A DNA stretch of 64,000 nt from Octopus sinensis (taxonomy: Eukaryota): positions 10,788,001 to 10,852,000 of the forward strand of contig NC_043023.1 in NCBI RefSeq assembly GCF_006345805.1. The letters run 5' to 3'. Positions 8,041-61,843 of this stretch are shown piece by piece. The notes under the pieces were generated by a model. That model was not told the DNA's origin, did not search any database, and saw nothing but the letters and a program-made list of their open reading frames with translations. The translations under genes and the position numbers were made by a program. Position 1 is the first letter of the stretch; the number at the start of each line of letters is the position of its first letter.

Positions 8041-8486
8041 TAAAGCTATAAAAAAAATCGAAACTTTTTTTTTTTTACTGAATGTACTTGCTTATCTCCC
8101 TTTACTCGTCTAATTAGCTTATCGTTTTTTCCAGTGTAATAAGCAACACATACTTCTGTCCGATCTAATTACTTCTTTTAATTAATGTTGTAATTATTGT
8201 GGTAACAACGTTCCTTCGTATATCCCATGGAATTGTCACCAAGAAAATGAAAGACTCGTAAGCTTAACATAATGAAGTGTGTTTTTTTTAAGACATCCAA
8301 GCTGTTCTATGTGGAGACGTAGAAGTCGTACACGGCTGAAAATATGTGAGTGCTGAAATGGTAAGAAGGGGAGAAATCAGAAGACAAAAAGTTTCAAAGT
8401 CTGAAAAGCAGAAGAACAAATTCTAAAATACTTTAAAAAAAAAAAAAAATAAATAATAATAATTATAATAGTAATAATAATAATAG

Positions 8487-8880
8487 GATCTTTTCCTTTT
8501 GAAGGCCAGATTTCAACACAATTTCTAGTTAACTAAACACTTTAAAACTTCGTTTACTGGTAGGATGTGTCAAAATAAAACATTTTTTTCTCTTGGCTTT
8601 CCTGAGAAAATTGTAATTTGTTTGTTTAACGTAGTTTAATCTTTCGAATTTTAACCAATCCTATGCTCTCTTTTGAGCTAAAATCATTTGCTGCGTCTAA
8701 AACAGACGACATCCTGTCACTAACCCTAACCCTAAATTTTAGCCTTTCGTTTTTTTTTTTTAATTTTAATTGTTAAATTAATTTAAGGAAATTAAATTAA
8801 TTAAGAAAAAAAAAACGAAAGCAATGGAAAATAATTTTAATTTAACAATTAAGAAAAAAAAAACGAAAGGCTAAAACTCA
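8487..8880. mobile_element. Truncated GG-terminal MITE (Merlin-like family)
   Basis: Starts ggatcttttccttttgaa like the complete copies at 45692 and 48306; the right end is absent. Confidence 0.65.
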
Positions 8881-9289: not shown

Positions 9290-9445
9290 GGCAAAACAAA
9301 AGTCCTGTGCAAAATATTCCCCAATCGCTATTACATACAAAAAGACATCCCACACATATTGCAGTGGAAGGGTTTTGTCATCTGTGGGTATTCTATGAGT
9401 ATGATTAAATCATTGTCAGACACAAAAGTTTCCCCACATTTTTCA
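9290..9445 (-). pseudogene. Decayed zinc fingers distal to the satellite (tail of the gene 2 array)
   Basis: Minus strand reads aaactattccactg..tgtggggaaacttttgtgtctgacaatgattta...aaacccttccactgcaatatgtgtgggatgtcttt, i.e. KLFH..CGETFVSDNDL...KPFHCNMCGMSF with indels. Confidence 0.75.
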
Positions 9446-12400
9446 GTGGAATAGTTTTTTCCTTTAACTGTTTTCTTAATTCACTGTTAAATACAAAGAC
9501 AATCCATTCATGACACACTGGAATAGTTTTTTTCTTTAACTGTTTTCTTAATTCACTGTTAAATACAAAGACAATCCATTCATGACACACTGGAATAGTT
9601 TTTCTCCAATACTTTCCTTTAACTGTTTTCTTAATTCACTGTTGAATACAAAGACAATCCATCCATGTCACAGTGGAATAGTTTTTTCTTTAACTGTTTT
9701 CTTAATTCACTGTTAAATACAAAGACAATCCATTGATGACACACAGGAATAGTTTTTCTCCAGTACTTTCCTTTAACTGTTTTCTTAATTCACTGTTAAG
9801 TACAAAGACAATCCATTCATGACACACTGGAATAGTTTTTCTCCAGTACTTCCTTTAACTGTTTCCTTAATTCACTGTTAAATACAAAGACAATCCATCC
9901 ATGTCACAGTGGAATAGTTTTTTCTTTAACTGTTTTCTTAATTCACTGTTAAATACAAAGACAATCCATTGATGACACACAGGAATAGTTTTTCTCCAGT
10001 ACTTTCCTTTAACTGTTTTCTTAATTCACTGTTAAGTACAAAGACAATCCATTCATGACACACTGGAATAGTTTTTCTCCAATACTTTCCTTTAACTGTT
10101 TTCTTAATTCACTGTTAAATACAAAGACAATCCATTCATGACACACTGGAATAGTTTTTCTCCAGTACTTTCCTTTAACTGTTTCCTTAATTCACTGTTA
10201 AATACAAAGACAATCCATCCATGTCACAGTGGAATAGTTTTTTCTTTAACTGTTTTCTTAATTCACTGTTAAATACAAAGACAATCCATTGATGACACAC
10301 GGGAATAGTTTTTCTCCAGTACTTTCCTTTAACTGTTTTCTTAATTCACTGTTAAATACAAAGACAATCCATCCATGTCACAGTGGAATAGTTTTTTCTT
10401 TAACTGTTTTCTTAATTCACTGTTAAATACAAAGACAATCCATTCATGACACACTGGAATAGTTTTTCTCCAATACTTTCCTTTAACTGTTTTCTTAATT
10501 CACTGTTAAATACAAAGACAATCCATCCATGTCACAGTGGAATAGTTTTTTCTTTAACTGTTTTCTTAATTCACTGTTAAATACAAAGACAATCCATTCA
10601 TGACACACTGGAATAGTTTTTCTCCAGTACTTTCCTTTAACTGTTTCCTTAATTCACTGTTAAATACAAAGACAATCCATCCATGTCACAGTGGAATAGT
10701 TTTTTCTTTAACTGTTTTCTTAATTCACTGTTAAATACAAAGACAATCCATTGATGACACACGGGAATAGTTTTTCTCCAGTACTTTCCTTTAACTGTTT
10801 TCTTAATTCACTGTAAATACAAAGACAATCCATCCATGTCACAGTGGAATAGTTTTTTCTTTAACTGTTTTCTTAATTCACTGTTAAATACAAAGACAAT
10901 CCATTCATGACACACTGGAATAGTTTTTCTCCAGTACTTTCCTTTAACTGTTTCCTTAATTCACTGTTAAATACAAAGACAATCCATCCATGTCACAGTG
11001 GAATAGTTTTTTCTTTAACTGTTTTCTTAATTCACTGTTAAATACAAAGACAATCCATTCATGACACACGGGAATAGTTTTTTCTTTAACTGTTTTCTTA
11101 ATTCACTGTTAAATACAAAGACAATCCATTCATGACACACTGGAATAGTTTTTTCTCCATACTTTCCTTTAACTGTTTTCTTAATTCACTGTTGAATACA
11201 AAGACAATCCATCCATGTCACAGTGGAATAGTTTTTTCTTTAACTGTTTTCTTAATTCACTGTTAAATACAAGACAATCCATTGATGACACACAGGAATA
11301 GTTTTTCTCCAGTACTTTCCTTTAACTGTTTTCTTAATTCACTGTTAAGTACAAAGACAATCCATTCATGACACACTGGAATAGTTTTTCTCCAGTACTT
11401 TCCTTTAACTGTTTCCTTAATTCACTGTTAATACAAAGACAATCCATCCATGTCACAGTGGAATAGTTTTTTCTTTAACTGTTTTCTTAATTCACTGTTA
11501 AATACAAAGACAATCCATTCATGACACACGGGAATAGTTTTTCTCCAGTACTTTCCTTTAACTGTTTTCTTAATTCACTGTAAATACAAAGACAATCCAT
11601 TCATGACACACTGGAATAGTTTTTCTCCAATACTTTCCTTTAACTGTTTTCTTAATTCACTGTTAAATACAAAGACAATCCATTCATGACACACTGGAAT
11701 AGTTTTTCTCCAGTACTTTCCTTTAACTGTTTCCTTAATTCACTGTTAAATACAAAGACAATCCATCCATGTCACAGTGGAATAGTTTTTTCTTTAACTG
11801 TTTTCTTAATTCACTGTTAAATACAAAGACAATCCATTCATGACACACGGGAATAGTTTTTCTCCAGTACTTTCCTTTAACTGTTTCCTTAATTCACTGT
11901 TAAATACAAAGACAATCCATCCATGTCACAGTGGAATAGTTTTTTCTTTAACTGTTTTCTTAATTCACTGTTAATTAAATACAAGACAATCCATTGATGA
12001 CACACGGGAATAGTTTTTCTCCAGTACTTTCCTTTAACTGTTTTCTTAATTCACTGTTAAATACAAAGACAATCCATTGATGACACACGGGAATAGTTTT
12101 TCTCCAATACTTTCCTTTAACTGTTTTCTTAATTCACTGTTAAATACAAAGACAATCCATTGATGACACACGGGAATAGTTTTTCTCCAGTACTTTCCTT
12201 TAACTGTTTTCTTAATTCACTGTTAAATACAAAGACAATCCATTGATGACACACGGGAATAGTTTTTCTCCAGTACTTTCCTTTAACTGTTTCCTTAATT
12301 CACTGTTAAATACAAAGACAATCCATCCATGTCACAGTGGAATAGTTTTTTCTTTAACTGTTTTCTTAATTCACTGTTAAATACAAAGACAATCCATTGA

Positions 12401-18729: not shown

Positions 18730-19096
18730 CTTTGTAACATAATTTCCACGTAACTAAACACTTTTAAACTTCGTATACTGGTAGAATGTGTTTATAAAAC
18801 ATCTTTTTCTCTTGGCTTTATTGAGAAAATTCTATAGTTTGTAAGATATTTGTTGGTTTTTTTCTGCAATTTCAACCAATCACTAACGTCCATTGAGGTA
18901 AAAAAAAAACATTCTGTACCATATGAATATGTCCCTCATTTAAGAAACAGATTGGGTTTATTTACATTTGTGAAGAAAAAAAGATACCCTTCCCCCCACC
19001 CCTAACCCTAAAACAGATCGATACTAGGGTCTTAATTATGGGTGAAAATTTCATATGACACCGCTAAAAAAAACTGCCGTTCAAACCGAAAAGATC
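18730..19096. mobile_element. GG-terminal MITE lacking its left end (same subfamily as 58986-59387)
   Basis: Ends gccgttcaaaccgaaaagatcc; internal ccctaaccctaa. Confidence 0.7.
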
Positions 19097-19197
19097 CTGA
19101 TACCCTAATATACATATAAACACGTCTATTATGTATTTATTGATTCGTATTGCTTTGAATTAATCGCACATTATCATGTAGCTTCAAGATTTCAAAT

Positions 19198-29480: not shown

Positions 29481-29653
29481 AACGATTAGCCAAAAGTGCC
29501 ACACAGTAGGACTGAACCTGATATCTGATGGTTGGGAAGCAAGCTTGTTAACCATACAGCTGTCAGTTTCCTTGCATTGATTCATTAAGGCCCATCTTTC
29601 CTTTTTATTTCTGGTTGCAATGTTTTCAACAAACCCTGTCACTACTTCCCTCC

Positions 29654-31148
29654 ACAAGTCGGTTGGCTTGCGCCTCGGTACCTGGAGGAGCAAGTCGATA
29701 TCGTCCAGCGTCGTGGGACACTGGACGGATGGCCCTGTTAAGTTGCTAGGAGTCTGGTTTGGGCCAGACTCCCAAACGGAGAGGAACTGGAGTGAGGTGA
29801 CGAGCAAGGTGGAGGCCATAGTACGGACCTGGTCCGGAAGGTCTCTGTCCTTGAAAGGAAGGGCGGAGGTGGTGCAGATGTTCATTGCATCTGTAATCAC
29901 TTACCGCCTGACCGTTGTCCCTTGCCCCGGTTCATGGCTTAACAAGTTGGAGCGAATCCTTTTCCGCTTTTTGTGGAAGGAAGGAAAGCCACTTGTGAGG
30001 CGCTCCGTTTGCTGCCAGGAACCGTTAAAGGGTGGGTTAGGAATGCCTTGGCTGATGATGCGCAGACATGCGTTGAGGCTGAAGCATCTCTGGCACCACC
30101 TGGAGGGTGATAAGGTGTGGAGTCTGCTGGCTGGGAAATTTTTCCCGAGACTGGCCTCCTTAACGGATTTTAAACCCGGTCGCATCAAAAGATGGAAACT
30201 GACTTTATGGCAAAAGGAGTGCCGACAGGCACTCACGCTGATCCACAAGGCGGGCAAGGCCGGCTGCGGAAATACCACCTCGGTATTTTATAGAAGGCTG
30301 GTAGAGGCAAAGAACGACGACGTCCTAGGAGGGGCTCTGGGGTTTGACGAAGACCAGCTTACCAACCTGTTAAAAAGACTTTCAGGACGGGGTACTTGGA
30401 TAATTTCCAAAGATCCCTGGCCTGGCAGTGCTATAGAACGCTCTACCTGTTCGCGAGAGAAGTTATCGCGGCACGGAATTCCAGTGCCACCAACGTGTCC
30501 AAGGTGCGAGTTGGACGATGAAACCGTCCAGCATGCCTTTGTACACTGTCGGAAGTTGTCAGACTTGATAAGTTACGCAGAACACGTGTTATCGCATCTA
30601 GGACGAGTACAGCTGTCGGCTGAGTCTATGATTAAGATGATACCGCCAACTGGACTCTCGAGGAAGGTGAGGCATGTTTTCACTGTACGGTTGCAGTAGT
30701 AAAAGAATGCATGTGGAGAACAAGAATGGAAGGAGTCGCGATAGGATCCTTTGTCTCGGGCCCCGGCTGCTCACTTACTTCAGATATCATCTGAAGAGCA
30801 AAATGGGGCTGGAAAAGAGGAACTTACCACGAGGTGTGTATGAGAAAAGATGGAAGGAAGTGGAAAAAAAGGTGGGTGTCAGAAACCCAGCTTAACTATG
30901 GAGGGAGGAGAGGAAATAAAAGCTGCGGGGCCTTATAAATTGCCGGGGTTTGAAACTTCGGTAAGATCAAAAAGGTTATGAACTGTGATAAGATTCTATT
31001 GGTCACGTAAAGGATAATTTATAGACGAATTTTTTAATCCAAATGTTATGGAAAAATTTTTAAAATCGAACCTCTTAATTATTTGTTTTGCATGTATGTT
31101 ATGTATTTGTAATTCTATGTAAACGATTGTATAATCGTAATAAAGAAA
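29654..31148 (+). mobile_element. 5'-truncated L1/Tx1-clade LINE with 15-bp TSD
   Basis: ORF 29620-30699 shows the RT thumb region (KLLGVWF...SLKGR...GGLG) and a CCHC finger (CPRC...ETVQHAFVHC), with internal frameshifts. tcactacttccctcc at 29639-29653 and 31149-31163; aataaa at 31139. Confidence 0.9.
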
Positions 31149-45109: not shown

Positions 45110-46890
45110 ACAAGGGGGCTCCTGAACAGTTCCTGACTTTTAGATTAAAAAATATATGTGAGGATTTTTTGCAACATATTCCCATCTCAGATTTACAGTG
45201 CAGTGGTCCTTCAGTTTTTCTAATCCCTGTAAAAGAACTCAAAATGTTGGGTCCCCAACATCTGTAACAGTGACCACTTCTGAGTTGGAGTGAAATTTCA
45301 TTCCCTTCAGAGGTAATAGTTGAAGAGGGCCAAATCAGGAGAATAAGATGGGTGATCTACCAATTCAAAGCCAAAATTAGTATTTTCCATAGTCTCATAT
45401 GCTGTGTATGCTGCTGCATTGTCCGGCAAAAACAGGATGCCACAGCTCAGCTTCCCACATTTCTGCTTCACAGTTTGTGCAACAGAGACTTGTAGTATTC
45501 AGTGTTGATTGAGCAACTCATTAGCAGGTATTTTATGAGGTGTACTCCTTCTTTGTCCCAGAACGCTGAAGCCAGAATCTTTCCAGCTGACTTCTGAATC
45601 TGAAACGTCTTGGGACACAGTGAACCTCTGTGGCACTACTCCATTGAATGCTGCTTGGTCTGGGGTTTGGTTGACGTTAGGAAGGGCATCCGGATCTTTT
45701 CCTTTTGAACGGCAGATGTCAACACAATTTGTAGTTAACTAAACACTTTAAAACTTCGTTTACTGGTAGAATATGTCAAAATAAAACATTTTTTTCTCTT
45801 GGCTTTCTTGAGAAAATTGTAATTTTTTTGTTTAACGTAGTTTAATTTTTCGAATTTTAACCAATCCTATGCTCTCTTTTGAGCTAAAATCATTTGCTGC
45901 ATCTAAAACTGAGACAACATCCTGTAACTAACCCTAAACCTGCCCCCTAACCCTAATTTTTTTTTTTATTAATTGTTACGAGTGTAAAAAAAACTAAAGC
46001 AATGGGATTAAATTAACAATTAAGAAAAAAAAGTTAGGGTTAGTTACAGGATGTTGTCTCAGTTTTAGACGCAGCAAATGATTTTAGTTGAATGGAGGTA
46101 ATCGATTGGTTAAAATTGCCGAAATGCTCGGATTTTCAGACGAAATATCTTACAAACTATAGAATTTTCTCAATAAAACCAAGAGAAAATGATGTTTTAT
46201 AAACACATTCTACCAGTATACGAAGTTTAAAAGTGTTTAGTTAACTAGAAATTGTGTTGACATCTGCCGTTCAAAAGGAAAAGATCCGGGCATCCTGCTG
46301 TAGAAACTCTGCCAGATCAAGATTGGAGTCTGGTGCAGCCATCCGGTTCACCAGTCCTCAGTCAAATTGTCCAACCCATGCTATCATGGAAAGCGGATGT
46401 TAAACGATGATGAAGTTAAGTTTCATTTATGGTCACTAAACAAGCCATAGAATCAGCCCCTCTTGCTGCAAACTGGTCCAAAATCACCTTTAGTGTCATC
46501 ACTCTGATGCACTTCCGACCTGTGTTCAGGCATTTCAGCACCTATTTTGCAGAAAGCTTTGTGTCCAGGATGCTGTGGATGACGTGGCCAAAATTTTTGT
46601 GGGAAATCCTGGTTCAGCTATGACCTTGGCTGAAATCCAGCAGTCGTCAAGAATCATGATGTGCACAGTGTTGACTTTGTCCTCTGTAATATAGAAGTTG
46701 GCCATCTTGACCAGGGATCATCTATGACCTCAAAATGACCAGTCCAAAACCTTGACATCCATATTTTCACTGTGAAGGGAGGTGGGTAGCCATCCTTCAA
46801 GATTTCCTTCCTCCCATCATGGATTTTCGCAGCTCCCGTTTGCCTTGCAAAAGCGGAACTTCATATGTTTCAATTTTACCAAAATCCACT
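45110..46890 (-). mobile_element. Degraded mariner transposase interrupted by an RTE-tail repeat and a MITE (~45665-46420)
   Basis: Minus strand gives QKSAGKILAS and PSYSPDLA, matching the mariner motifs SAGKVMASVFWD and YSPDLAP. Confidence 0.7.
45692..46287. mobile_element. Complete Merlin-like MITE with long TIRs and 8-bp TSD gggcatcc
   Basis: GG...CC termini (ggatcttttccttttgaacggcag / ctgccgttcaaaaggaaaagatcc); TSD at 45684-45691 and 46288-46295. Confidence 0.85.
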
Positions 46891-48290: not shown

Positions 48291-48305
48291 AAAGCAAGAC
48301 ATTTG

Positions 48306-50061
48306 GGATCTTTTCCTTTTGAAGGCCAGATTTCAACATAATTTCTAGTTAACTAAACACTTTTAAACTTTGTATACTGGGAGAACGTGTCAAAATAAAA
48401 CATTTTTCGGATCCTTTCCTTTTGAACGGCAGTTTTCAACACAATTTCTAGTTAACTAAACACTTTTAAACTTTGTATACTGGGAGAACGTGTCAAAATA
48501 AAACATTTTTCGGATCTTTTCCTTTTGAACGGCAGTTTTCAACATAATTTCTAGTTAACTAAACACTTTTAAACTTTGTATACTGGGAGAACGTGTCAAA
48601 ATAAAACATTTTTCGGACCTTTTCCTTTTGAACGGCAGATGTCAACACAATTTCTACTTAACTAAACACTTTTAAACTTCGTATACTGGTAGAATGTGTC
48701 AAAATAAAACATTTTTTGGATCTTTTCCTTTTGAACGGCAGTTTTCAACATAATTTCTAGTTAACTAAACACTTTTAAACTTTGTATACTGGGAGAACGT
48801 GTCAAAATAAAACATTTTTCGGATCTTTTCCTTTTGAACGGCAGTTTTCAACATAATTTCTAGTTAACTAAACACTTTTAAACTTTGTATACTGGGAGAA
48901 CGTGTCAAAATAAAACATTTTTCGGATCTTTTCCTTTTGAACGGCAGTTTTCAACATAATTTCTAGTTAACTAAACACTTTTAAACTTTGTATACTGGGA
49001 GAACGTGTCAAAATAAAACATTTTTCGGATCTTTTCCTTTTGAACGGCAGTTTTCAACATAATTTCTAGTTAACTAAACACTTTTAAACTTGTATACTGG
49101 GAGAACGTGTCAAAATAAAACATTTTTCGGATCTTTTCCTTTTGAACGGCAGTTTTCAACATAATTTCTAGTTAACTAAACACTTTTAAACTTTGTATAC
49201 TGGGAGAACGTGTCAAAATAAAACATTTTTCGGATCTTTTCCTTTTGAACGGCAGTTTTCAACATAATTTCTAGTTAACTAAACACTTTTAAACTTTGTA
49301 TACTGGGAGAACGTGTCAAAAAAAACATTTTTCGGATCTTTTCCTTTTGAACGGCAGTTTTCAACATAATTTCTAGTTAACTAACACTTTTAAACTTTGT
49401 ATACTGGAGAACGTGTCAAAATAAAACATTTTTCGGATCTTTTCCTTTTGAACGGCAGTTTTCAACATAATTTCTAGTTAACTAAACATTTTTAAACTTC
49501 GTATACTGGTAGGATGTGTCAAAATAAAACATTTTTTTTCTCTTGGCTTTCTTGAGAAAATTGTAATTTGTTAGTTTAACGTAGTTTAATTTTTCGAATT
49601 GTAACCAATCCTATGCTCTCTTTTCAGCTAAAATCATTTGCTGCATCTAAAACTGAGACAACATCCTGTCACTAACCCTAAACCTCCCCCCTAACCCTAA
49701 ATTTTTTTTTCTTAATTGTTAAATTAATTTAATTGTTATGAGTGTAAAAAAAACTAAAGCAATGGAATTAAATTAATTTAACAATTAAGAAAAAAAAATT
49801 TAGGGTTAGGGTTAGTGAGAGGATGTTGTCTCAGTTTTAGACGCAGCAAATGATTTTAGTTGAATGGAGGTAATCGATTGGTTAAAATTGCCAAAATGCT
49901 CGGATTTTCAGATGAAATATCTTACAAATTATAGAATTTTCTCAATAAAACCAAGAGAAAAAAATGTTTTATTTTGACACATTCTACCAGTATACGAAGT
50001 TTATAAGTGTTTAGTTAACTAGAAATTGTGTTACAAAGTGCCGTTCAAAAGGAAAAGATCC
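48306..50061. mobile_element. Merlin-like MITE whose left ~103-bp end is tandemly amplified 12 times
   Basis: TIR starts at 48306, 48409, 48512, 48615, 48718, 48821, 48924, 49027, 49129, 49232, 49334 and 49435; a single right TIR ends at 50061; flanks gacatttg / aacatttg. Confidence 0.9.
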
Positions 50062-50279: not shown

Positions 50280-50995
50280 AATTGTAACTGTGATACCAGT
50301 GTCGGTGGCACGTAAAAGAAACCATCCGAACATGGCCGTAGCTAGCGCTGCATCGACTGGCCTCCGTGCTGCTGGCATGTAACAAACATCATCCGATCGT
50401 GACTGTTGCCAGCCTTGCCTAGCCTCTGTGCCTGTGGCACGTAAAAGGCACCATCCGATCATGGCAGTTGCCAGCCTAGCCTGGCCTCTGTGCCGGTGGC
50501 ACATAAAAAGCACCATCCAAGCGTGGCCGTTCGTCAGCCTCATCTGGCCTCTGTGCCAGTGGCACGTAAAAAGCACCATCCGATCATGGCCATTTGCCAG
50601 CCTAGCCTAGCCTCTGTGCCGGTGGCACGTAAAAAGCACCAGTCAAGCGTGGCCGTTCGTCAGCCTCGTCTGGCCTCTGTGCCAGTGGCACGTAAAAAGC
50701 ACCATCCGATCGTGGCCGTTTGCCAGCCTAGTCCAGCCTCTGTGCCGGTGGCACGTAAAAAGCACCATCCAAGCGTGGCCATTCGCCAGCCTCGTCGGGC
50801 ACCTGTGCCGGTAGAACGTAAAAAGCACCCACTACACTCACGGGAGTGGTTGGTGTTAGGAAGGGCATCCAGCTGTAGAAACACTGCCAGAACTGACTGG
50901 GCCTGGTGCAGCCTTCGGGCTTCCCAGACCCCAGTCGAACCGTCCAAGCCATGCTAGAATGGAAAGCGGACGTTAAACAATGATGATGATGAAAC
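50280..50995 (-). mobile_element. RTE-tail repeat with ~9 internal 59-bp tandem units
   Basis: Repeated ggcacgtaaaaagcaccatccgatcgtggccgtttgccagcc..gcctctgtgcc.gt. Confidence 0.75.
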
Positions 50996-51065: not shown

Positions 51066-51228
51066 ACAGCAGGAGTGGCTGTGTGGTAAGTAGCTTGTTT
51101 ACCAACCACATGGTTCCGGGTTCAGTCCCACTGCGTGGCATCTTGGGCAAGTGTATTCTGCTATAGCCCCAGGCCGACCAATGCCTTGAGAGTGGATTTG
51201 GTAGATGGAAACTGAACGAAGCCTGTCG

Positions 51229-51265
<37 letters not shown>

Positions 51266-51482
51266 ATATGTGTTTGTGTGTCTGTGTTTGTCTCCCCTGG
51301 CATTGCTTGACAACCGATGCTGGTGTGTTTACGTCGCCGTTACTTAGCGGTTCGGCAAAAGAGAGCAATAGAATAAGTACTAGGCTTACAAAGAATAAGT
51401 CCCGGGGTCGATTTGCTCGACTAAAAGGCGGTGCTCCAGCATGGCCGCAGTCAAATGACTGAAACAAGTAAAAGATAAAGAG
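51066..51482 (+). mobile_element. SINE family B full-length copy abutting the 3' end of the transposase ORF
   Basis: Head, (TA)n and tail intact. Confidence 0.8.
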
Positions 51483-51496
51483 CCCCTTAGTTCTGT

Positions 51497-52363
51497 TCAT
51501 GAAAAACGAAAGTTTGCGATGCACTCAAGTAGTTTATCAAGCAAATTACAATTTTCATATTTCCTGCGCCACATAAACTCACAGAGATATGAGTCAACCA
51601 TAGAAGGGTGAGTGCCACGGCGTCGTTTGATACCTTCTTTTATAGAGGCCTGGGTACTCTCCACTTGTTGAATGTCAGTACCATCTTCCAATTTGACAAA
51701 CGCAATGCTTTGGTTCACTGTACCATGTTCAAAATAATAACCATCAATTTCAGGAATGTGAGAGTATGCCCTCCACATATCACTATAAATTGTGGTCCCT
51801 GGAAGAATCAACTTCTGTATGCATTCCTCCAGTGTGTCACGATTCCGACATGGCACCGCATAAAGAAAAACCTCTCTGGTCTCAAGACACACACCCCCAT
51901 AAACCCACTGCTCAGGTAGGATCTCTCCATGGTTGTATTTAAGTCTTGAAAAGACCGTTTCATCCATCTCAACAATCTTCCCAGGACCCCCAATTTTAAC
52001 TGGGTTGCGTATAAGGTCCTCCGCGCATATTTCCCGAACAAAGCAGTTGTATTCAACAGCCGTGCTGTGGCTCATGCCCAATTTTTCAACACAAAACTGG
52101 ACTGAAGTCAATTCCTTGACCCATGAGTGAAGGAAAAGCACCACAGTCCTAAGAGGAAGGGTTCTACCTTCCAACCACGTACCTTTTCTCACTGATACAG
52201 ACTCCATGCATCCTCTGTGGGAGCACCGCCAATAAATGTTCCTACCACGGACTTTTTTTAACATATAATGCTTTTTATTTTTGCATACTTTTATCTTGGG
52301 GATAATACCCTTCTCTTGCAAGTAAGAAACTGCATCCGCCTCTGTTTTTATTGTCTCCATCAT
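51497..52363 (-). CDS. Merlin (IS1595/ISXO2-like) DDE transposase-derived protein, 288 aa
   Basis: Motifs IGGPGKIVEMDET (D134), WVYGG, TIYSDMWRAY (D195), HGTVN, QVES (E235) and SYLCEFMWRR; uninterrupted ATG-to-stop ORF. Confidence 0.9.
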   Translation of the reverse strand: MMETIKTEADAVSYLQEKGIIPKIKVCKNKKHYMLKKVRGRNIYWRCSHRGCMESVSVRKGTWLEGRTLPLRTVVLFLHSWVKELTSVQFCVEKLGMSHSTAVEYNCFVREICAEDLIRNPVKIGGPGKIVEMDETVFSRLKYNHGEILPEQWVYGGVCLETREVFLYAVPCRNRDTLEECIQKLILPGTTIYSDMWRAYSHIPEIDGYYFEHGTVNQSIAFVKLEDGTDIQQVESTQASIKEGIKRRRGTHPSMVDSYLCEFMWRRKYENCNLLDKLLECIANFRFS

Positions 52364-52575
52364 ATATGAAAGGCAAGTATCAAAAATACAATATAAAATA
52401 TCCCAAAATAGTAACAGATGGGTACAAGCAGGAAAGCACAGTGTAAAATATCAGTTTGTAAACACAAGTGGTTTATGTAGGAGAATTCTGATGCTCAGCT
52501 GGTTAATGGATCTGATGTAAATAATTCTTTGAGGCCAGTGTCATCTGATGCTCTGAAATTATAGAAAATGAGAAC
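52364..52575 (-). promoter_or_regulatory. ZNF-family splice acceptor (tataatttcag|52552) and 189-nt leader upstream of the Merlin ORF
   Basis: 31/41 identity to the first bases of the gene 1 leader; 20/23 to gene 3 (20562-20584); the 11 nt before the junction are identical to gene 6. Confidence 0.7.
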
Positions 52576-52699
52576 TTTGTAAGATATAGAGGTTAATTAA
52601 AAAGCAGAGGAGAAATCTCTAGTCATCATTTATTCTCCCACTCTCCTCTTGTTTCCACCCAACTTATATTTATCGACCATCCTTTCATCATTTATTTCT

Positions 52700-53740
52700 A
52701 TACCTATTTCTTTATTACCCACAAGGGGCTAAACATAGAGGGAACAAACAAGGACAGACATAGGTATTAAGTCGATTACATCGACCTCAGTGCGTAACTG
52801 GTACTTGTTTAATCGACCCCGAAAGGATGAAAGGTAAAGTCGACCTCGGCGGAATTTGAACTCACAACGTAACAGCAGACGAAATACCTATTTCTTTACT
52901 ACCCACAAGGGGCTAAACACAGAGAGGACAAACAAGGACAGACAGATGGATAAAGTCGATTATATCGACCCCAGTGCGTAACTGGTACTTAATTTATCGA
53001 CCCCGAAAGGATGAAAGGCAAAGTTGACCTCGGCGGAATTTGAACTCACAACGTAACGGCAGACAAAATACCCGGCGTGCTAACGTTTCTGCCAGCTCAC
53101 CGACTGGTCAGCAAACAGGAGTGAATTACCCCACGCTAGTTAAAATGAAACTTTTGGGAATAATGAGGCCTCGACGACTGGCACCCACGCCAACTTCCTT
53201 TCATTGGACACTAAACTCTGCTTGCGAAAACCTGTTGGGCAAGTGAAATCGAAATTGAACCAAAATTCGATGACTGGCACCCGTGCCAGTGGAGCACTAA
53301 CAGCTCCATCTGAGCGGGATCACTGTCAGAGTGGCTGTCTGGCTTCCGTGCTGGTGGGCACATAAAAAGCACCATTTGAGCGTGATCGTTACCAGCATCA
53401 CCTTACTGGCACTTGTGCCAGTGGTACGTGAACAAAACATTCGAGCGAGGTCGTTGCCAGTGCCGCTGGACTGACTCCTGTGCAGGTGGCACGTAAAAAA
53501 CACCATTTCAAGCGTGGCCATTGCCAGTACCGCCAGACTGGCCCTCGTGTTGGTGGCATGTAAAAGCACCCACTACACTCTCAGAGTGATTGGTGTTAGG
53601 AAGGGCATCCAGCTGTAGAAACTCTGCCAGATCAAGACTGGAGCCTGGCGCAGCCATCTGATTTGCCAGTCCTCAGTCAAATCGTCCAACCCATGCTAGC
53701 ATGGAAAGCGGATGTTAAACGATGATGATGATGATGATAT
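52700..53740 (-). mobile_element. SINE family A (2 bodies, 52700-53100) and RTE-tail repeat (53190-53740)
   Basis: Family motifs as above. Confidence 0.75.
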
Positions 53741-58715: not shown

Positions 58716-58985
58716 AAAAAAATTATTTTAAACCACAGATTAAAATACGGACAGTATGAATTTTTGGTTTAAATCCCAGCGATAAACCAGAAACGATAAC
58801 AGTATGAGGTGATCATGTGAGATGCTAAAAATAACAGCTAAATACCCCTTAAATCACACTTTTTTTTTTTGCATAATTGTATGAATTCCCGTGTTTAGAA
58901 TACAAATTCGCAAAAATTTTCAGAAAATTCTGAAAAATAAAAAAAATTATGACGGATTGTTAAGGGTGTTTAAAACAGAATTGCC

Positions 58986-59387
58986 GGATCTTTTCGGTTT
59001 GACCGGCAGTTTTTTAAATAATTTCCACGTAACTAAACACTTTTAAACTTCGTATACTGTTAGAATGTGTTTATAAAACATCTTTTTCTCTTGGCTTTAT
59101 TGAGAAAATTCTATAGTTTGTAAGATATTTGTTGTTTTTTTTTTCTGCAATTTCAACCAATCAATGACGTCTATTGAGGTGAAAACATTCTGTGCCGTAT
59201 GAATATGTACCTCGTTTAAGAAACAGATTGGGTTTATTTACATTTCTGAAGAAAAATAAAGATACCCTTCCCCCCACCCCTAACCCTAAAACATTGAAAT
59301 GCAATAGATCGATACTAGGGTCATAATTATGGGTGACAATTTCATGACACCGCTAGAAAAAAACTGCCGTTCAAACCGAAAAGATCC
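58986..59387. mobile_element. Complete Merlin-like MITE with 8-bp TSD gaattgcc
   Basis: ggatcttttcggtttgaccggcag / ctgccgttcaaaccgaaaagatcc; TSD at 58978-58985 and 59388-59395. Confidence 0.85.
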
Positions 59388-59604
59388 GAATTGCCCTTTG
59401 GTTTTAGGTTTATATGTCTCGGGGACTAACAATAGTTTCAAATTTTGGCACAAGGCCAGCACTTTTTGTTGTTTAACTCAAGTCCATTACAATGACTCCA
59501 AAATTTGATTGGTATTTACTTAAACCCTGAAGGGACAAAGGGTAAAGTTGACCTTGGCGGAATTTGAATCATAATGACTAAATATCACTCAAGCATTTTG
59601 GGCG

Positions 59605-61062: not shown

Positions 61063-61319
61063 ATTATCGTCTAATGCTCTAAAATCATTTCTACTGTTCT
61101 GTAGTTCAACACTTTGATGCTACACATGAAAGGGGTGTAGTTGTAGTCTGTAAGAATGTAGACATCACACAAGGTTGTGCCATAGAGTTTCAATAACAAA
61201 TTTAAAACTAAATTTCTGTTGTTTGGATAAATGTTTATAGCTGCAGCTAATCAGTCTAGTAAAATATAGTAAAATTTTCACTACTGAATCTCATTTTAAG
61301 TATCCTCCATAACTTATGC

Positions 61320-61843
61320 TGTTTCTTTATAATTTCAGGATATCCCATGACATCGTCATTAAGGAATTATAATTTACCTCGGATGTATCCTCAGTATTTA
61401 TCAGCTGTGAAAGATTAAAAGAACATGATATATAGAGTGTTTAAAACAAGAGATATTACATTGAATTTTATAAGCCTGCTATAGAATTTGTTTTAAATAT
61501 TTTCTCTGGACTAAAATTAATTGTTAAATGCCCCTATTTCACCGAGTGGATGTGTACAAGGTGGTTCTGGATTCTAATTGAAATCAGATGACAAAGGAGT
61601 TTGCCCTGGCTGTGGATATTAACAAAGGTTGCTGTTGATGAAAATTTAGCAAAGAAAATATTTGTTTTGAATAAAATATAAAACTCTGCTGATATGAAAA
61701 TATATATTATGATGATAAAATTGAAATTATAGAAAAGCGTTTGTGCGATGACATGCTTAAATGAAAATGAAATTAGATTGATTTTCCTGATGAGATGTCA
61801 AAGCATACTGACAAAAACATTGTAGAGTTGTGATAGCTGTAAA
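61320..61843 (+). promoter_or_regulatory. Splice acceptor (tttcag|61339) and uninterrupted ~505-nt leader of gene 6
   Basis: Contains the shared caaaggagtttgc...gatatt.acaaag...gatga/ggaaat block. Confidence 0.6.

What the first reader, a model, noticed from the sequence alone, without database searches (positions are those of the whole stretch)
51497..52575. Merlin transposase ORF captured behind the ZNF cluster's own splice acceptor and leader: candidate domesticated gene
Seen: an uninterrupted 288-aa Merlin/IS1595-type ORF with all three acidic catalytic positions (D134, D195, E235) and no recognisable TIRs nearby. 189 nt upstream lies tataatttcag|agcatcagatgacactggcctcaaagaattatttacatcagat, which aligns to the acceptor and leader start of the plus-strand ZNF genes (31/41 with gene 1, 20/23 with gene 3, 11 identical acceptor nt with gene 6). 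It occupies the minus-strand slot of the alternating gene pattern, and no zinc fingers follow it. Some family-typical residues appear drifted (NH to NQ, HTQ to DIQ, ES.W to ESTQ). Established: Merlin transposons normally carry GG-terminal TIRs and 8-9-bp TSDs. Inference: a ZNF gene chassis has had its finger array replaced by a transposase, which would then be expressed like a ZNF paralog, possibly as a MITE-end-binding regulator.
Basis: partly seen in the sequence, partly recalled or inferred. Interest (0 to 1): 0.88.

Follow-up and report, generated by a model that had tools for sequence, protein, structure and literature searches.

The report
Merlin transposase behind zinc-finger gene leader
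An old, immobile Merlin transposase reading frame in an octopus zinc-finger gene cluster sits directly behind the splice acceptor and 5' leader of a zinc-finger gene, and the same arrangement arose independently at two or more other loci, which makes it a credible but unproven host-captured transposase gene.

Summary
Window 51497-52363 (-) is an intact 288-aa DDE_Tnp_IS1595 (Merlin) ORF. It has no TIRs, and homology to at least 143 genomic relatives stops within about 10 nt of the ORF. The 170 nt upstream (52504-52673, -) are homologous (nhmmer E=2e-32) to the intron end, AG acceptor and first ~50 nt of the 5'UTR exon of C2H2 ZNF genes. No finger array follows.

New here: two other intact, TIR-less family members (chr21 LOC115222964 and chr28 LOC115225578) also lie in ZNF clusters behind a ZNF-type leader on the same strand, while decayed TIR-bearing copies do not. 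The three belong to different transposon lineages (AU p=1e-11) and have different leader breakpoints, so capture was recurrent. The chr21 gene is syntenic and intact in O. bimaculoides and annotated as an intact 296-aa protein in O. vulgaris, with no indels in 891 nt against 13 in 1140 nt of flank.

For the window copy, selection is equivocal. Terminal-branch omega is 0.58, not significantly below decayed copies at 0.88. Residues near the catalytic glutamate are lost. No ortholog or transcript could be examined.

Verdict: the architecture is real and interesting. Domestication is plausible (about 0.5) and unproven.

The parts
51497..52363 (-). Intact 288-codon Merlin/IS1595-type transposase ORF plus TGA stop. 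The N-terminal part keeps a C-x4-H...C-x4-C zinc module and helices. The RNase-H-like core keeps D134, D195 and E235 but has lost conserved neighbours (H213Q, HT229-230DI, W238Q).
52364..52503 (-). 140-nt spacer between the end of the ZNF-leader homology and the ATG; it would be 5'UTR. Only the last ~10 nt (52364-52373) match other family copies. The rest has no detectable relative in the genome. It carries no further ATG.
52504..52552 (-). Start of a ZNF-type 5'UTR leader exon (about 49-55 nt retained). It contains a 13-codon uORF (ATG at 52544, TAA ending at 52503) whose ATG is shared with several ZNF leaders. Homology to ZNF leaders ends near 52498-52504.
52553..52673 (-). ZNF-type intron 3' end: about 120 nt of homologous intron, a polypyrimidine tract and the AG acceptor (AG at 52554-52553).
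   Evidence: nhmmer 52673-52504, E=1.9e-32
51100..51470 (-). SINE-like repeat that begins about 27 nt after the stop codon. It marks the downstream limit of unique sequence, and no Merlin 3' region lies beyond it.
52696..53072 (-). Two tandem SINE-like copies directly upstream of the leader-homologous intron piece. They mark the upstream limit of the unit.

Best explanation
The locus is a chimeric gene-like unit. The coding exon of a C2H2 zinc-finger cluster gene has been replaced by the ORF of an old Merlin DNA transposon that has lost both ends and can no longer move.

Shown:
- The ORF is intact and Merlin-type.
- TIRs and the transposon's non-coding regions are gone.
- The 170 nt upstream are homologous to the intron end, AG acceptor and first ~50 nt of the 5'UTR exon of ZNF genes, in the same orientation.
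- The same layout exists at two or more other loci, derived from different Merlin lineages.

Inferred mechanism:
- A Merlin copy inserted in sense orientation just downstream of a ZNF gene's leader.
- Transcripts starting at the ZNF promoter splice into the leader at 52552, run through 189 nt of 5'UTR with one short uORF, and are translated from the ATG pair at 52363/52360.
- The finger exon and the transposon ends were later lost, while the open frame was kept by selection at the host level.
- The product would be a 288-aa protein that keeps the N-terminal zinc module and helices. It probably no longer cuts DNA, because the third catalytic block has degenerated, evolves neutrally and is modelled with low confidence.
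- Its most likely activity is sequence-specific binding to ends of Merlin elements or Merlin-type MITEs, acting as a regulator or repressor and not as a transposase.
For: - Architecture: the leader profile hits at E=1.9e-32. All nine other best genomic matches of the leader are followed by C2H2 arrays in the same orientation. Annotated octopus ZNF proteins start inside the finger exon, so the leader is 5'UTR and only the coding exon is swapped.
- Immobility: homology to all other copies is confined to the ORF plus or minus 10 nt. Subfamilies on both sides of this copy in the tree carry the same GG-terminal TIR, about 330 nt upstream and about 700 nt downstream of the ORF. That TIR is absent here.
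- Age versus integrity: the terminal branch is 0.12 substitutions per site, about 100 substitutions. Decayed copies carry about 0.05 stops, and species-flank alignments about 0.05 frameshifting gaps, per substitution. P(intact) is therefore about 1e-4 if the whole branch was neutral and about 0.003-0.007 if half was.
- Recurrence: L002 (chr21) and L006 (chr28) are intact, TIR-less, lie in ZNF clusters and have a ZNF leader upstream on the same strand. No significant leader hit was found among the other 29 fetched loci with 1.5-kb flanks, of which 28 are decayed copies.
- L002 is syntenic and intact in O. bimaculoides with 0 gaps in 891 nt, against 13 gap events in 1140 nt of flank, and is annotated as an intact 296-aa protein in O. 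vulgaris.
- L006 has omega about 0.3 on a branch of length 0.23.
- The N-terminal 125 codons of the window copy have omega about 0.4, and omega=1 is disfavoured (2dlnL 4.9).
- The protein is an annotated NCBI/UniRef entry.
Against: - Omega on this copy's own branch is 0.58. That is not significantly below decayed copies (0.88, p about 0.11) and is significantly above the value for active-lineage branches (0.21). Single decayed copies also give 0.5-0.6.
- Codons 126-288 look neutral (omega about 0.8, and 1.3 for codons 201-255).
- No O. bimaculoides protein more than 65% identical and no O. vulgaris protein at 90% or more is annotated, although both exist for the chr21 paralog.
- No transcript, splice junction, first exon or promoter was seen. 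No canonical AATAAA lies in the 500 nt after the stop.
- The codon model is my own code with branch lengths fixed from a nucleotide tree.
Confidence: 0.5

Rival explanations
1. Dead relic. A Merlin copy landed in, or was joined by deletion to, the 5' leader of a ZNF gene and destroyed it. The finger exon and the transposon ends were then lost by ordinary deletions. The frame is still open by chance, and nothing is expressed or selected.
For: Omega of 0.58 is indistinguishable from decayed copies, and the catalytic half is neutral. Conserved residues next to the catalytic E are lost. No annotated counterpart exists in O. vulgaris or O. bimaculoides. If only about a quarter to a half of the terminal branch was post-insertion, P(intact) is 0.003-0.07 per copy, and there are hundreds of copies.
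Against: It needs three coincidences: an intact frame after about 100 substitutions, ends trimmed to within about 10 nt (3') and 140 nt (5') of the ORF, and a same-strand ZNF acceptor 189 nt upstream. The same combination occurs at two other loci. One of these has direct cross-species evidence for frame maintenance, and the other has omega about 0.3. Intactness and leader presence are associated: 3 of 4 intact copies against 0 of the decayed copies with a complete 5' end (my Fisher estimate is about 0.004).
Confidence: 0.36
2. A single ancient capture. One ZNF-leader plus Merlin gene arose once and was copied with the expanding ZNF clusters. The window gene, L002 and L006 would then be paralogs, and their scattered positions in the tree would come from gene conversion by transposon copies.
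For: All three lie in ZNF clusters and share the layout. The window copy and L002 share about 10 nt upstream of the ATG. A clade of only the window copy plus L002 is rejected weakly (p=0.029, and the group was named after the tree was seen).
Against: A clade of all three is rejected (AU p=1.2e-11, lnL difference 95). The window copy sits inside a 99/96-supported clade with a TIR-bearing burst, and L006 sits inside a 100/99 clade with another burst. The leader breakpoints differ: about exon +50 here, about +25 in L002, and the whole leader exon plus donor in L006. The distances to the ATG also differ, at 189, about 270 and about 710 nt.
Confidence: 0.08
3. It is still a mobile or recently mobile autonomous Merlin element whose ends I failed to recognise.
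For: The DDE triad is present and the frame is complete.
Against: There are no TIRs and no transposon non-coding regions. The nearest relative is 82% identical or less at the nucleotide level, so it has no recent sister copies. Motif residues conserved in all active-looking relatives are lost.
Confidence: 0.02

Closest known systems
Host-transposase capture genes of tetrapods, such as KRABINER (Cosby et al., bioRxiv 10.1101/2020.05.07.082677)
   Same: A DNA transposon inserts into a host gene (often a ZNF or KRAB gene), and the transposase exon is joined to upstream host exons through an acceptor just upstream of the ORF. The parental transcript may later be lost, and the process is recurrent.
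   Different: There the acceptor comes from the transposon and a host protein domain is fused to the transposase DNA-binding domain. Here the acceptor and leader come from the host, the host part is non-coding, the whole transposase ORF is kept, and the finger exon is gone. Merlin does not occur in the text of that paper (0 occurrences). Splicing here is not demonstrated.
Putatively domesticated Merlin ORFs of Stentor, Symbiodinium and Perkinsela (PLoS One 2021, PMC8101967)
   Same: Preserved Merlin ORFs without TIRs or TSDs, some with degraded DDE-region conservation, some copied by segmental duplication, proposed to be domesticated on that basis.
   Different: Those are protists, and no link to a host gene's exon structure is reported. 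Here the host 5' exon context is identified, and one paralog is conserved across three octopus species.
Octopus LOC115222964 / O. bimaculoides LOC106884119 / O. vulgaris CAI9738362.1
   Same: Same transposase family (62-65% aa identity). It is TIR-less and sits in a tandem ZNF array behind a ZNF-type acceptor and leader on the same strand. The third catalytic block is also degenerate, with the conserved W lost.
   Different: It comes from a different Merlin lineage with a different leader breakpoint. Frame maintenance across species is demonstrated for it, which is not available for the window copy.
SETMAR (SET exons spliced to a Hsmar1 mariner transposase, primates; from my own knowledge)
   Same: A host 5' part drives expression of an immobilised transposase exon whose DNA-binding function is retained while transposition activity is crippled.
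   Different: SETMAR is an in-frame fusion with a host enzymatic domain. Here only an untranslated leader is host-derived.

Membership tests
Merlin / IS1595-superfamily transposase (protein homology) | DDE_Tnp_IS1595 domain above Pfam's gathering score | tested here: met
   PF12762, E=3.3e-9, 37.4 bits against a cut-off of 27, residues 162-267
Merlin / IS1595-superfamily transposase (protein homology) | Three acidic catalytic residues at the aligned positions, within an RNase-H-like fold | tested here: met
   D134 and D195 invariant, E235 nearly invariant. AF2 model has pLDDT 78; Foldseek hits retroviral integrase cores and the ISCth4 transposase
Merlin / IS1595-superfamily transposase (protein homology) | Conserved residues of the third motif block (N-H, H-T-Q/N, E-S-x-W) | tested here: not met
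   The window protein has NQ, DIQ and ESTQ, while the family consensus and outside relatives keep the motif. This segment has pLDDT below 50
Autonomous Merlin transposon (mobile element) | Terminal inverted repeats beginning with GG | tested here: not met
   The family TIR was defined from other copies. It is absent next to the ORF and from the whole window
Autonomous Merlin transposon (mobile element) | 8-9-bp target-site duplication | not testable with these tools
   With no element ends there is no place to look. A neighbouring MITE does show an 8-bp duplication
Autonomous Merlin transposon (mobile element) | Near-identical sister copies from recent transposition | tested here: not met
   The best other copy is 82% identical or less at the nucleotide level, and the terminal branch is 0.12
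Domesticated or host-captured transposase gene | Immobilised, single-locus copy with an intact ORF older than the neutral survival time of a frame | tested here: met
   About 100 substitutions on its own branch with no stop or frameshift. P is about 1e-4 to 7e-3 depending on how much of the branch was post-insertion
Domesticated or host-captured transposase gene | Purifying selection on the coding sequence | tested here: inconclusive
   Branch omega is 0.58 (about 0.37-0.97). It is not different from decayed copies (p about 0.11), is marginally below 1 (p about 0.04), is about 0.4 in the N-terminal part and about 0.8 in the core
Domesticated or host-captured transposase gene | Syntenic, intact orthologs in other species | not testable with these tools
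   Other octopus genomes could not be searched at this locus. The indirect evidence is weakly negative: no annotated counterpart in O. vulgaris or O. bimaculoides
Domesticated or host-captured transposase gene | Transcripts spliced from host exons into the transposase exon | not testable with these tools
   No RNA data were reachable. Only the sequence of the acceptor, and its homology to ZNF acceptors, is shown
Domesticated or host-captured transposase gene | In-frame fusion to a host protein domain (for the 'fusion' subclass) | tested here: not met
   The leader is non-coding, an in-frame stop lies at 52451-52453, and there is only a 13-codon uORF
Octopus C2H2 ZNF cluster gene | ZNF-type intron end, acceptor and 5'UTR leader | tested here: met
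   nhmmer E=1.9e-32 for the first part of the leader. The second part of the leader exon is absent
Octopus C2H2 ZNF cluster gene | Array of C2H2 fingers in the coding exon | tested here: not met
   No finger-like segment between 43651 and 60948 on either strand at E<1e-3

The most novel reading that the evidence does not exclude
Octopus genomes have repeatedly (at least three times, from different Merlin lineages) replaced the finger-coding exon of C2H2 ZNF cluster genes with a Merlin transposase ORF. This puts the transposase under ZNF promoters and 5'UTR exons. The resulting small convergent gene set is kept open but evolves fast. It acts as binders or repressors of Merlin and MITE ends in a conflict with the elements they came from. 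These would be the first Merlin-derived host genes in animals, and a host-supplied-acceptor version of transposase capture.
Probability: 0.35. Interest if true: 0.8.

Novelty: new variant of a known kind. Interest (0 to 1): 0.62.

Why it matters
Transposase capture is a known route to new transcription factors in vertebrates. It is barely explored in invertebrates, and I know of no described Merlin-derived host gene in animals. Octopus genomes are noted for their very large C2H2 ZNF clusters and heavy transposon load. A recurrent swap of the ZNF coding exon for a transposase ORF would link the two. It would show a capture route in which the host, not the transposon, supplies the splice acceptor, and it would give a concrete, testable set of three or more loci. 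If the window copy turns out to be a relic, the finding still documents how such chimeras start, and it points to the chr21 paralog as the better candidate.

Tried and rejected
- Finding the O. bimaculoides syntenic region through the neighbouring ZNF gene: the whole-protein search was swamped by unrelated C2H2 proteins. A search restricted to the non-finger N-terminus found nothing.
I did not try it by other means. I used a marginal-likelihood branch model that outputs no sequences.
I rejected it as evidence because decayed copies of older subfamilies give the same value.
- Looking for a conserved first exon or promoter upstream of the leader: only shared SINEs and satellites were found.
- Looking for the rest of the ZNF leader exon or a finger remnant downstream of the ORF: none.
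- The 'minus-strand slot' argument: the leader is of the plus-strand gene type, intergenic homology between cluster units has decayed, and the slot cannot be verified.
Full report
WHAT THE WINDOW IS

The window is chromosome-scale contig C27:10788001-10852000 of a 2.72-Gb genome. Protein names of the closest hits identify it as Octopus sinensis. It holds a C2H2 zinc-finger (ZNF) gene cluster. Finger arrays lie at 2.5-4.4 kb (+), 9.3-14.7 kb (-), 21.2-23.5 kb (+), 32.7-34.6 kb (-), 42.8-43.7 kb (+) and 61.6-62.9 kb (+). No finger-like sequence lies between 43651 and 60948.

CHECK OF THE OBSERVATION

- The ORF 51497-52363 (-) is open for 288 codons.
- It scores above Pfam's cut-off for DDE_Tnp_IS1595.
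- It aligns with D134 and D195 invariant and E235 nearly invariant among 18 relatives.
- An AlphaFold2 model (pLDDT 78) has an N-terminal beta-hairpin zinc module (C27, H32, C47, C52 all present), a helical region, and an RNase-H-like core that Foldseek matches to retroviral integrase cores and an IS256-family transposase.
- The segment 217-254 around E235 is modelled with pLDDT below 50. The family's own majority consensus and relatives from other animals keep the canonical residues.

THE FAMILY IN THE GENOME

- At least 143 protein-level matches exist, and 650 DNA candidates were seen at first look. Most have stops and frameshifts.
- No copy is more than about 82% identical in nucleotides to the window ORF.
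- Homology between the window copy and every other copy starts within about 10 nt of the ATG and ends within about 10 nt of the stop.
- Other copies share about 310-350 nt upstream and up to about 700 nt downstream with each other.
- Their ends are GG-terminal inverted repeats of about 23 nt (GGATCTTTTCTGTTTGGCTGCCA and its complement). This fits the published definition of Merlin: GG-terminal TIRs and 8-9-bp TSDs (PMC8101967).
- The same TIR occurs in copies of both the younger ('A') and the older ('B') bursts. The window copy branches between these two bursts, so its progenitor should have had this TIR.
- The TIR is absent from the whole window. Profiles of the 5' and 3' non-coding regions find nothing beside the ORF, and no other inverted repeat brackets it.
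- The copy is therefore an end-less, immobile, ORF-only remnant.

THE LEADER

- blastn of the upstream 277 nt against the window hits the regions 460-700 nt upstream of the plus-strand finger exons. The alignment covers the 3' end of an intron, a polypyrimidine tract, the AG and the next ~45-55 nt.
- In the genome, this 150-nt piece has 40 or more matches (E down to 3e-18), many at regular 5.5-6.5-kb spacing on chromosome 30.
- All nine other best matches are followed, on the same strand and within about 0.25-1 kb, by a C2H2 array.
- A profile built from nine such ZNF leaders (intron -150 to exon +55, window copy excluded) hits 52673-52504 (-) at E=1.9e-32. It also picks up the leader of the sixth ZNF gene (61238-61393, E=4e-14), which likewise was not used to build it.
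- A profile of the rest of the leader exon and the following intron finds all the ZNF genes but nothing near the transposase ORF.
- Homology therefore stops about 50 nt into the leader exon, near 52498-52504.
- Annotated octopus ZNF proteins begin inside the large finger exon. The leader is thus 5'UTR, and what differs here is the coding exon alone.
- The 189 nt between acceptor and ATG contain one 13-codon uORF whose ATG is shared with several ZNF leaders, and no other ATG.
- The scenario 'the leader belongs to the transposon' is excluded. No TIR-bearing copy has the leader.

IS THE FRAME MAINTAINED BY SELECTION?

Method:
- I built an ORF-anchored nucleotide alignment of about 50 copies and a maximum-likelihood tree.
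- The window copy has a terminal branch of 0.12 substitutions per site. It sits at the base of the stem leading to the A burst, inside a 99/96-supported clade.
- Instead I wrote a codon-likelihood branch model, with branch lengths fixed from the nucleotide tree and F3x4 codon frequencies.

Omega estimates:
- Internal branches, which are active transposon lineages, have omega 0.21.
- Terminal branches of the other copies have 0.88.
- The window's terminal branch has 0.58, with a profile interval of about 0.37-0.97.
- Equality with the other terminals is not rejected (2dlnL 2.6, p about 0.11). Omega=1 is marginally rejected (4.4, p about 0.04). Equality with internal branches is rejected (15.7).
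- Split by domain, codons 1-125 give about 0.4 (omega=1 disfavoured, 2dlnL 4.9), codons 126-288 give about 0.8, and codons 201-255 give about 1.3.
- Individual decayed copies also give 0.5-0.6, so dN/dS does not single this copy out.

Frame integrity:
- The argument for selection rests on the intact frame.
- Decayed copies carry about 0.05 stops per expected substitution. Simulation from the window ORF gives 0.036.
- Orthologous non-coding flanks between two octopus species carry 13 gap events per 193 mismatches.
- For about 100 substitutions this gives P(no stop, no frameshift) near 1e-4.
With hundreds of copies that no longer excludes chance.

THE NEW FINDING: THE ARRANGEMENT RECURS

The only other full-length intact members of this family found were L002 (chr21, LOC115222964), L006 (chr28, LOC115225578, with a duplicate on an unplaced contig) and the N-terminally incomplete L011.

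L002:
- It shares no flank homology with transposon copies.
- It lies between two same-strand ZNF genes about 8-9 kb away on each side.
- It has a ZNF-leader profile hit 270-350 nt upstream on the same strand (E=2e-3). The orthologous O. bimaculoides locus has one as well (E=2e-4).

L006:
- It lies next to a same-strand ZNF gene.
- It is preceded by both halves of the leader (E=3e-7 and 3e-10), with a donor-like site. The Merlin ATG follows about 710 nt later, behind a long pyrimidine tract.

Association:
- Among the 32 fetched loci with 1.5-kb flanks, only these two gave a leader hit.
- Counting the window copy, 3 of 4 intact copies have a leader, against none of roughly 15 decayed copies with a complete 5' end. 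My Fisher estimate is about 0.004.

Independent origins:
- L006 groups with a different burst (100/99 support). L002 lies in the basal polytomy.
- A tree that holds the three together is rejected (AU p=1.2e-11). The group was named after the tree was seen.
- The leader breakpoints and the distances to the ATG also differ between the three.

Evidence for selection on the two paralogs:
- The O. sinensis and O. bimaculoides L002 loci are collinear at about 89-91% identity. Both ORFs are 296 codons.
- The L002 ORF has 63 substitutions and no gap in 891 nt. The 1140 aligned flank positions have 193 mismatches and 13 gap events.
- O. vulgaris also has an intact 296-aa protein for L002.
- At the amino-acid level L002 is only weakly constrained (pairwise omega 0.48, terminal branch about 0.8). 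L006 is clearly constrained (about 0.3).
- Taking the three as one foreground class gives omega 0.54 against 0.92 (2dlnL 13.0), driven mostly by L006.
- All of these octopus proteins have lost the conserved W of the third block.

INTERPRETATION

The best reading is host capture. A sense-oriented Merlin insertion just downstream of a ZNF leader put the transposase ORF under the ZNF promoter and 5'UTR. The finger exon and transposon ends were later lost, and the frame was retained.

This works like the transposase-capture route described for tetrapods (bioRxiv 10.1101/2020.05.07.082677). It differs in that the acceptor is host-derived and no host protein domain is fused.

The retained zinc module, the lower N-terminal omega and the decayed catalytic block suggest a DNA binder and not an enzyme. 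That is inference.

Candidate targets exist nearby:
- a 402-bp MITE with 24-nt GG-terminal TIRs and an 8-bp TSD at 58986-59387;
- a 12-unit tandem array whose unit begins with the same end at 48302-49536.

For the window copy itself the claim stays unproven. There is no RNA evidence and no ortholog. No counterpart is annotated in O. vulgaris or O. bimaculoides, and dN/dS is compatible with decay.

I put the captured-gene reading at about 0.5 and the dead-relic reading at about 0.36. A single capture followed by duplication gets about 0.08, and a still-mobile element about 0.02.

LIMITS

- The codon model is my own implementation.
- The alignment is anchored on the window ORF.
- Only about 50 of the copies were sampled.
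- Leader hits at L002 are weak on their own (E about 1e-3) and gain weight only from position, strand and conservation in a second species.
- A majority consensus of this DNA-transposon family was computed inside scripts for comparison and is not reproduced here.

Noticed in passing
window 58978-59395: A 402-bp MITE (58986-59387) with 24-nt GG-terminal inverted repeats and an exact 8-bp target-site duplication (GAATTGCC on both sides), which is the Merlin signature. Its TIR shares about 17 of 23 positions with the TIR of the transposase family studied here. A related copy lies at 18731-19097.
   Followed up: partly
window 48302-49536 (also 8486-8862, 45692-45941): Twelve tandem copies of a 103-bp unit (96% matches) that begins with the same GG-terminal TIR-like end as the MITE. 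This looks like a satellite built from a Merlin-type MITE end, and it lies about 2 kb downstream of the transposase ORF.
   Followed up: partly
L064/L065 (G000:C21:18088000-18107999) and L063 (O. bimaculoides CM046621.1): LOC115222964 / LOC106884119 is a TIR-less Merlin ORF of 296 aa in a tandem ZNF array behind a ZNF-type leader. It is syntenic between O. sinensis and O. bimaculoides and is annotated as an intact 296-aa protein in O. vulgaris. It has no indel in 891 nt against 13 in 1140 nt of flank. It is a stronger domestication candidate than the window copy.
   Followed up: yes
L076/L077 (G000:C28:2957001-2977000), ORF at local 10696-11511 (-): LOC115225578 is an intact Merlin ORF preceded by a complete ZNF-type leader exon with a donor-like site and, about 710 nt later, a long pyrimidine tract before its ATG. 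Omega is about 0.3 on a long branch. NCBI lists two isoforms. A second Merlin fragment lies in tandem at 9335-9997.
   Followed up: partly
G000 copies L003, L004, L008-L010, L016 (e.g. C14:66575905-66577611, C23:16090267-16093983): A young sub-group of the family (terminal branches 0.02-0.045) occurs as closely spaced pairs. These copies share only about 20-30 nt upstream and about 100 nt downstream of the ORF, so they seem to have been copied by something other than TIR-to-TIR transposition.
   Followed up: no
G000, many loci listed (e.g. C15:13640146-13640967, C4:79376631-79377452): A second Merlin family, only 35-39% identical to the window protein, has dozens of full-length copies without stops (about 305 aa). 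It is probably a recently active family.
   Followed up: no
window 50299-50829: A 63/126-bp tandem repeat that produces long spurious ORFs on both strands (repeated 'VPVARKKHHP' peptides). It is not a gene.
   Followed up: no
window 29581-30699 (+): A 372-aa open frame that looks like the C-terminal part of a retroelement (LINE-type) protein, lying between ZNF genes. I judged this by eye only.
   Followed up: no
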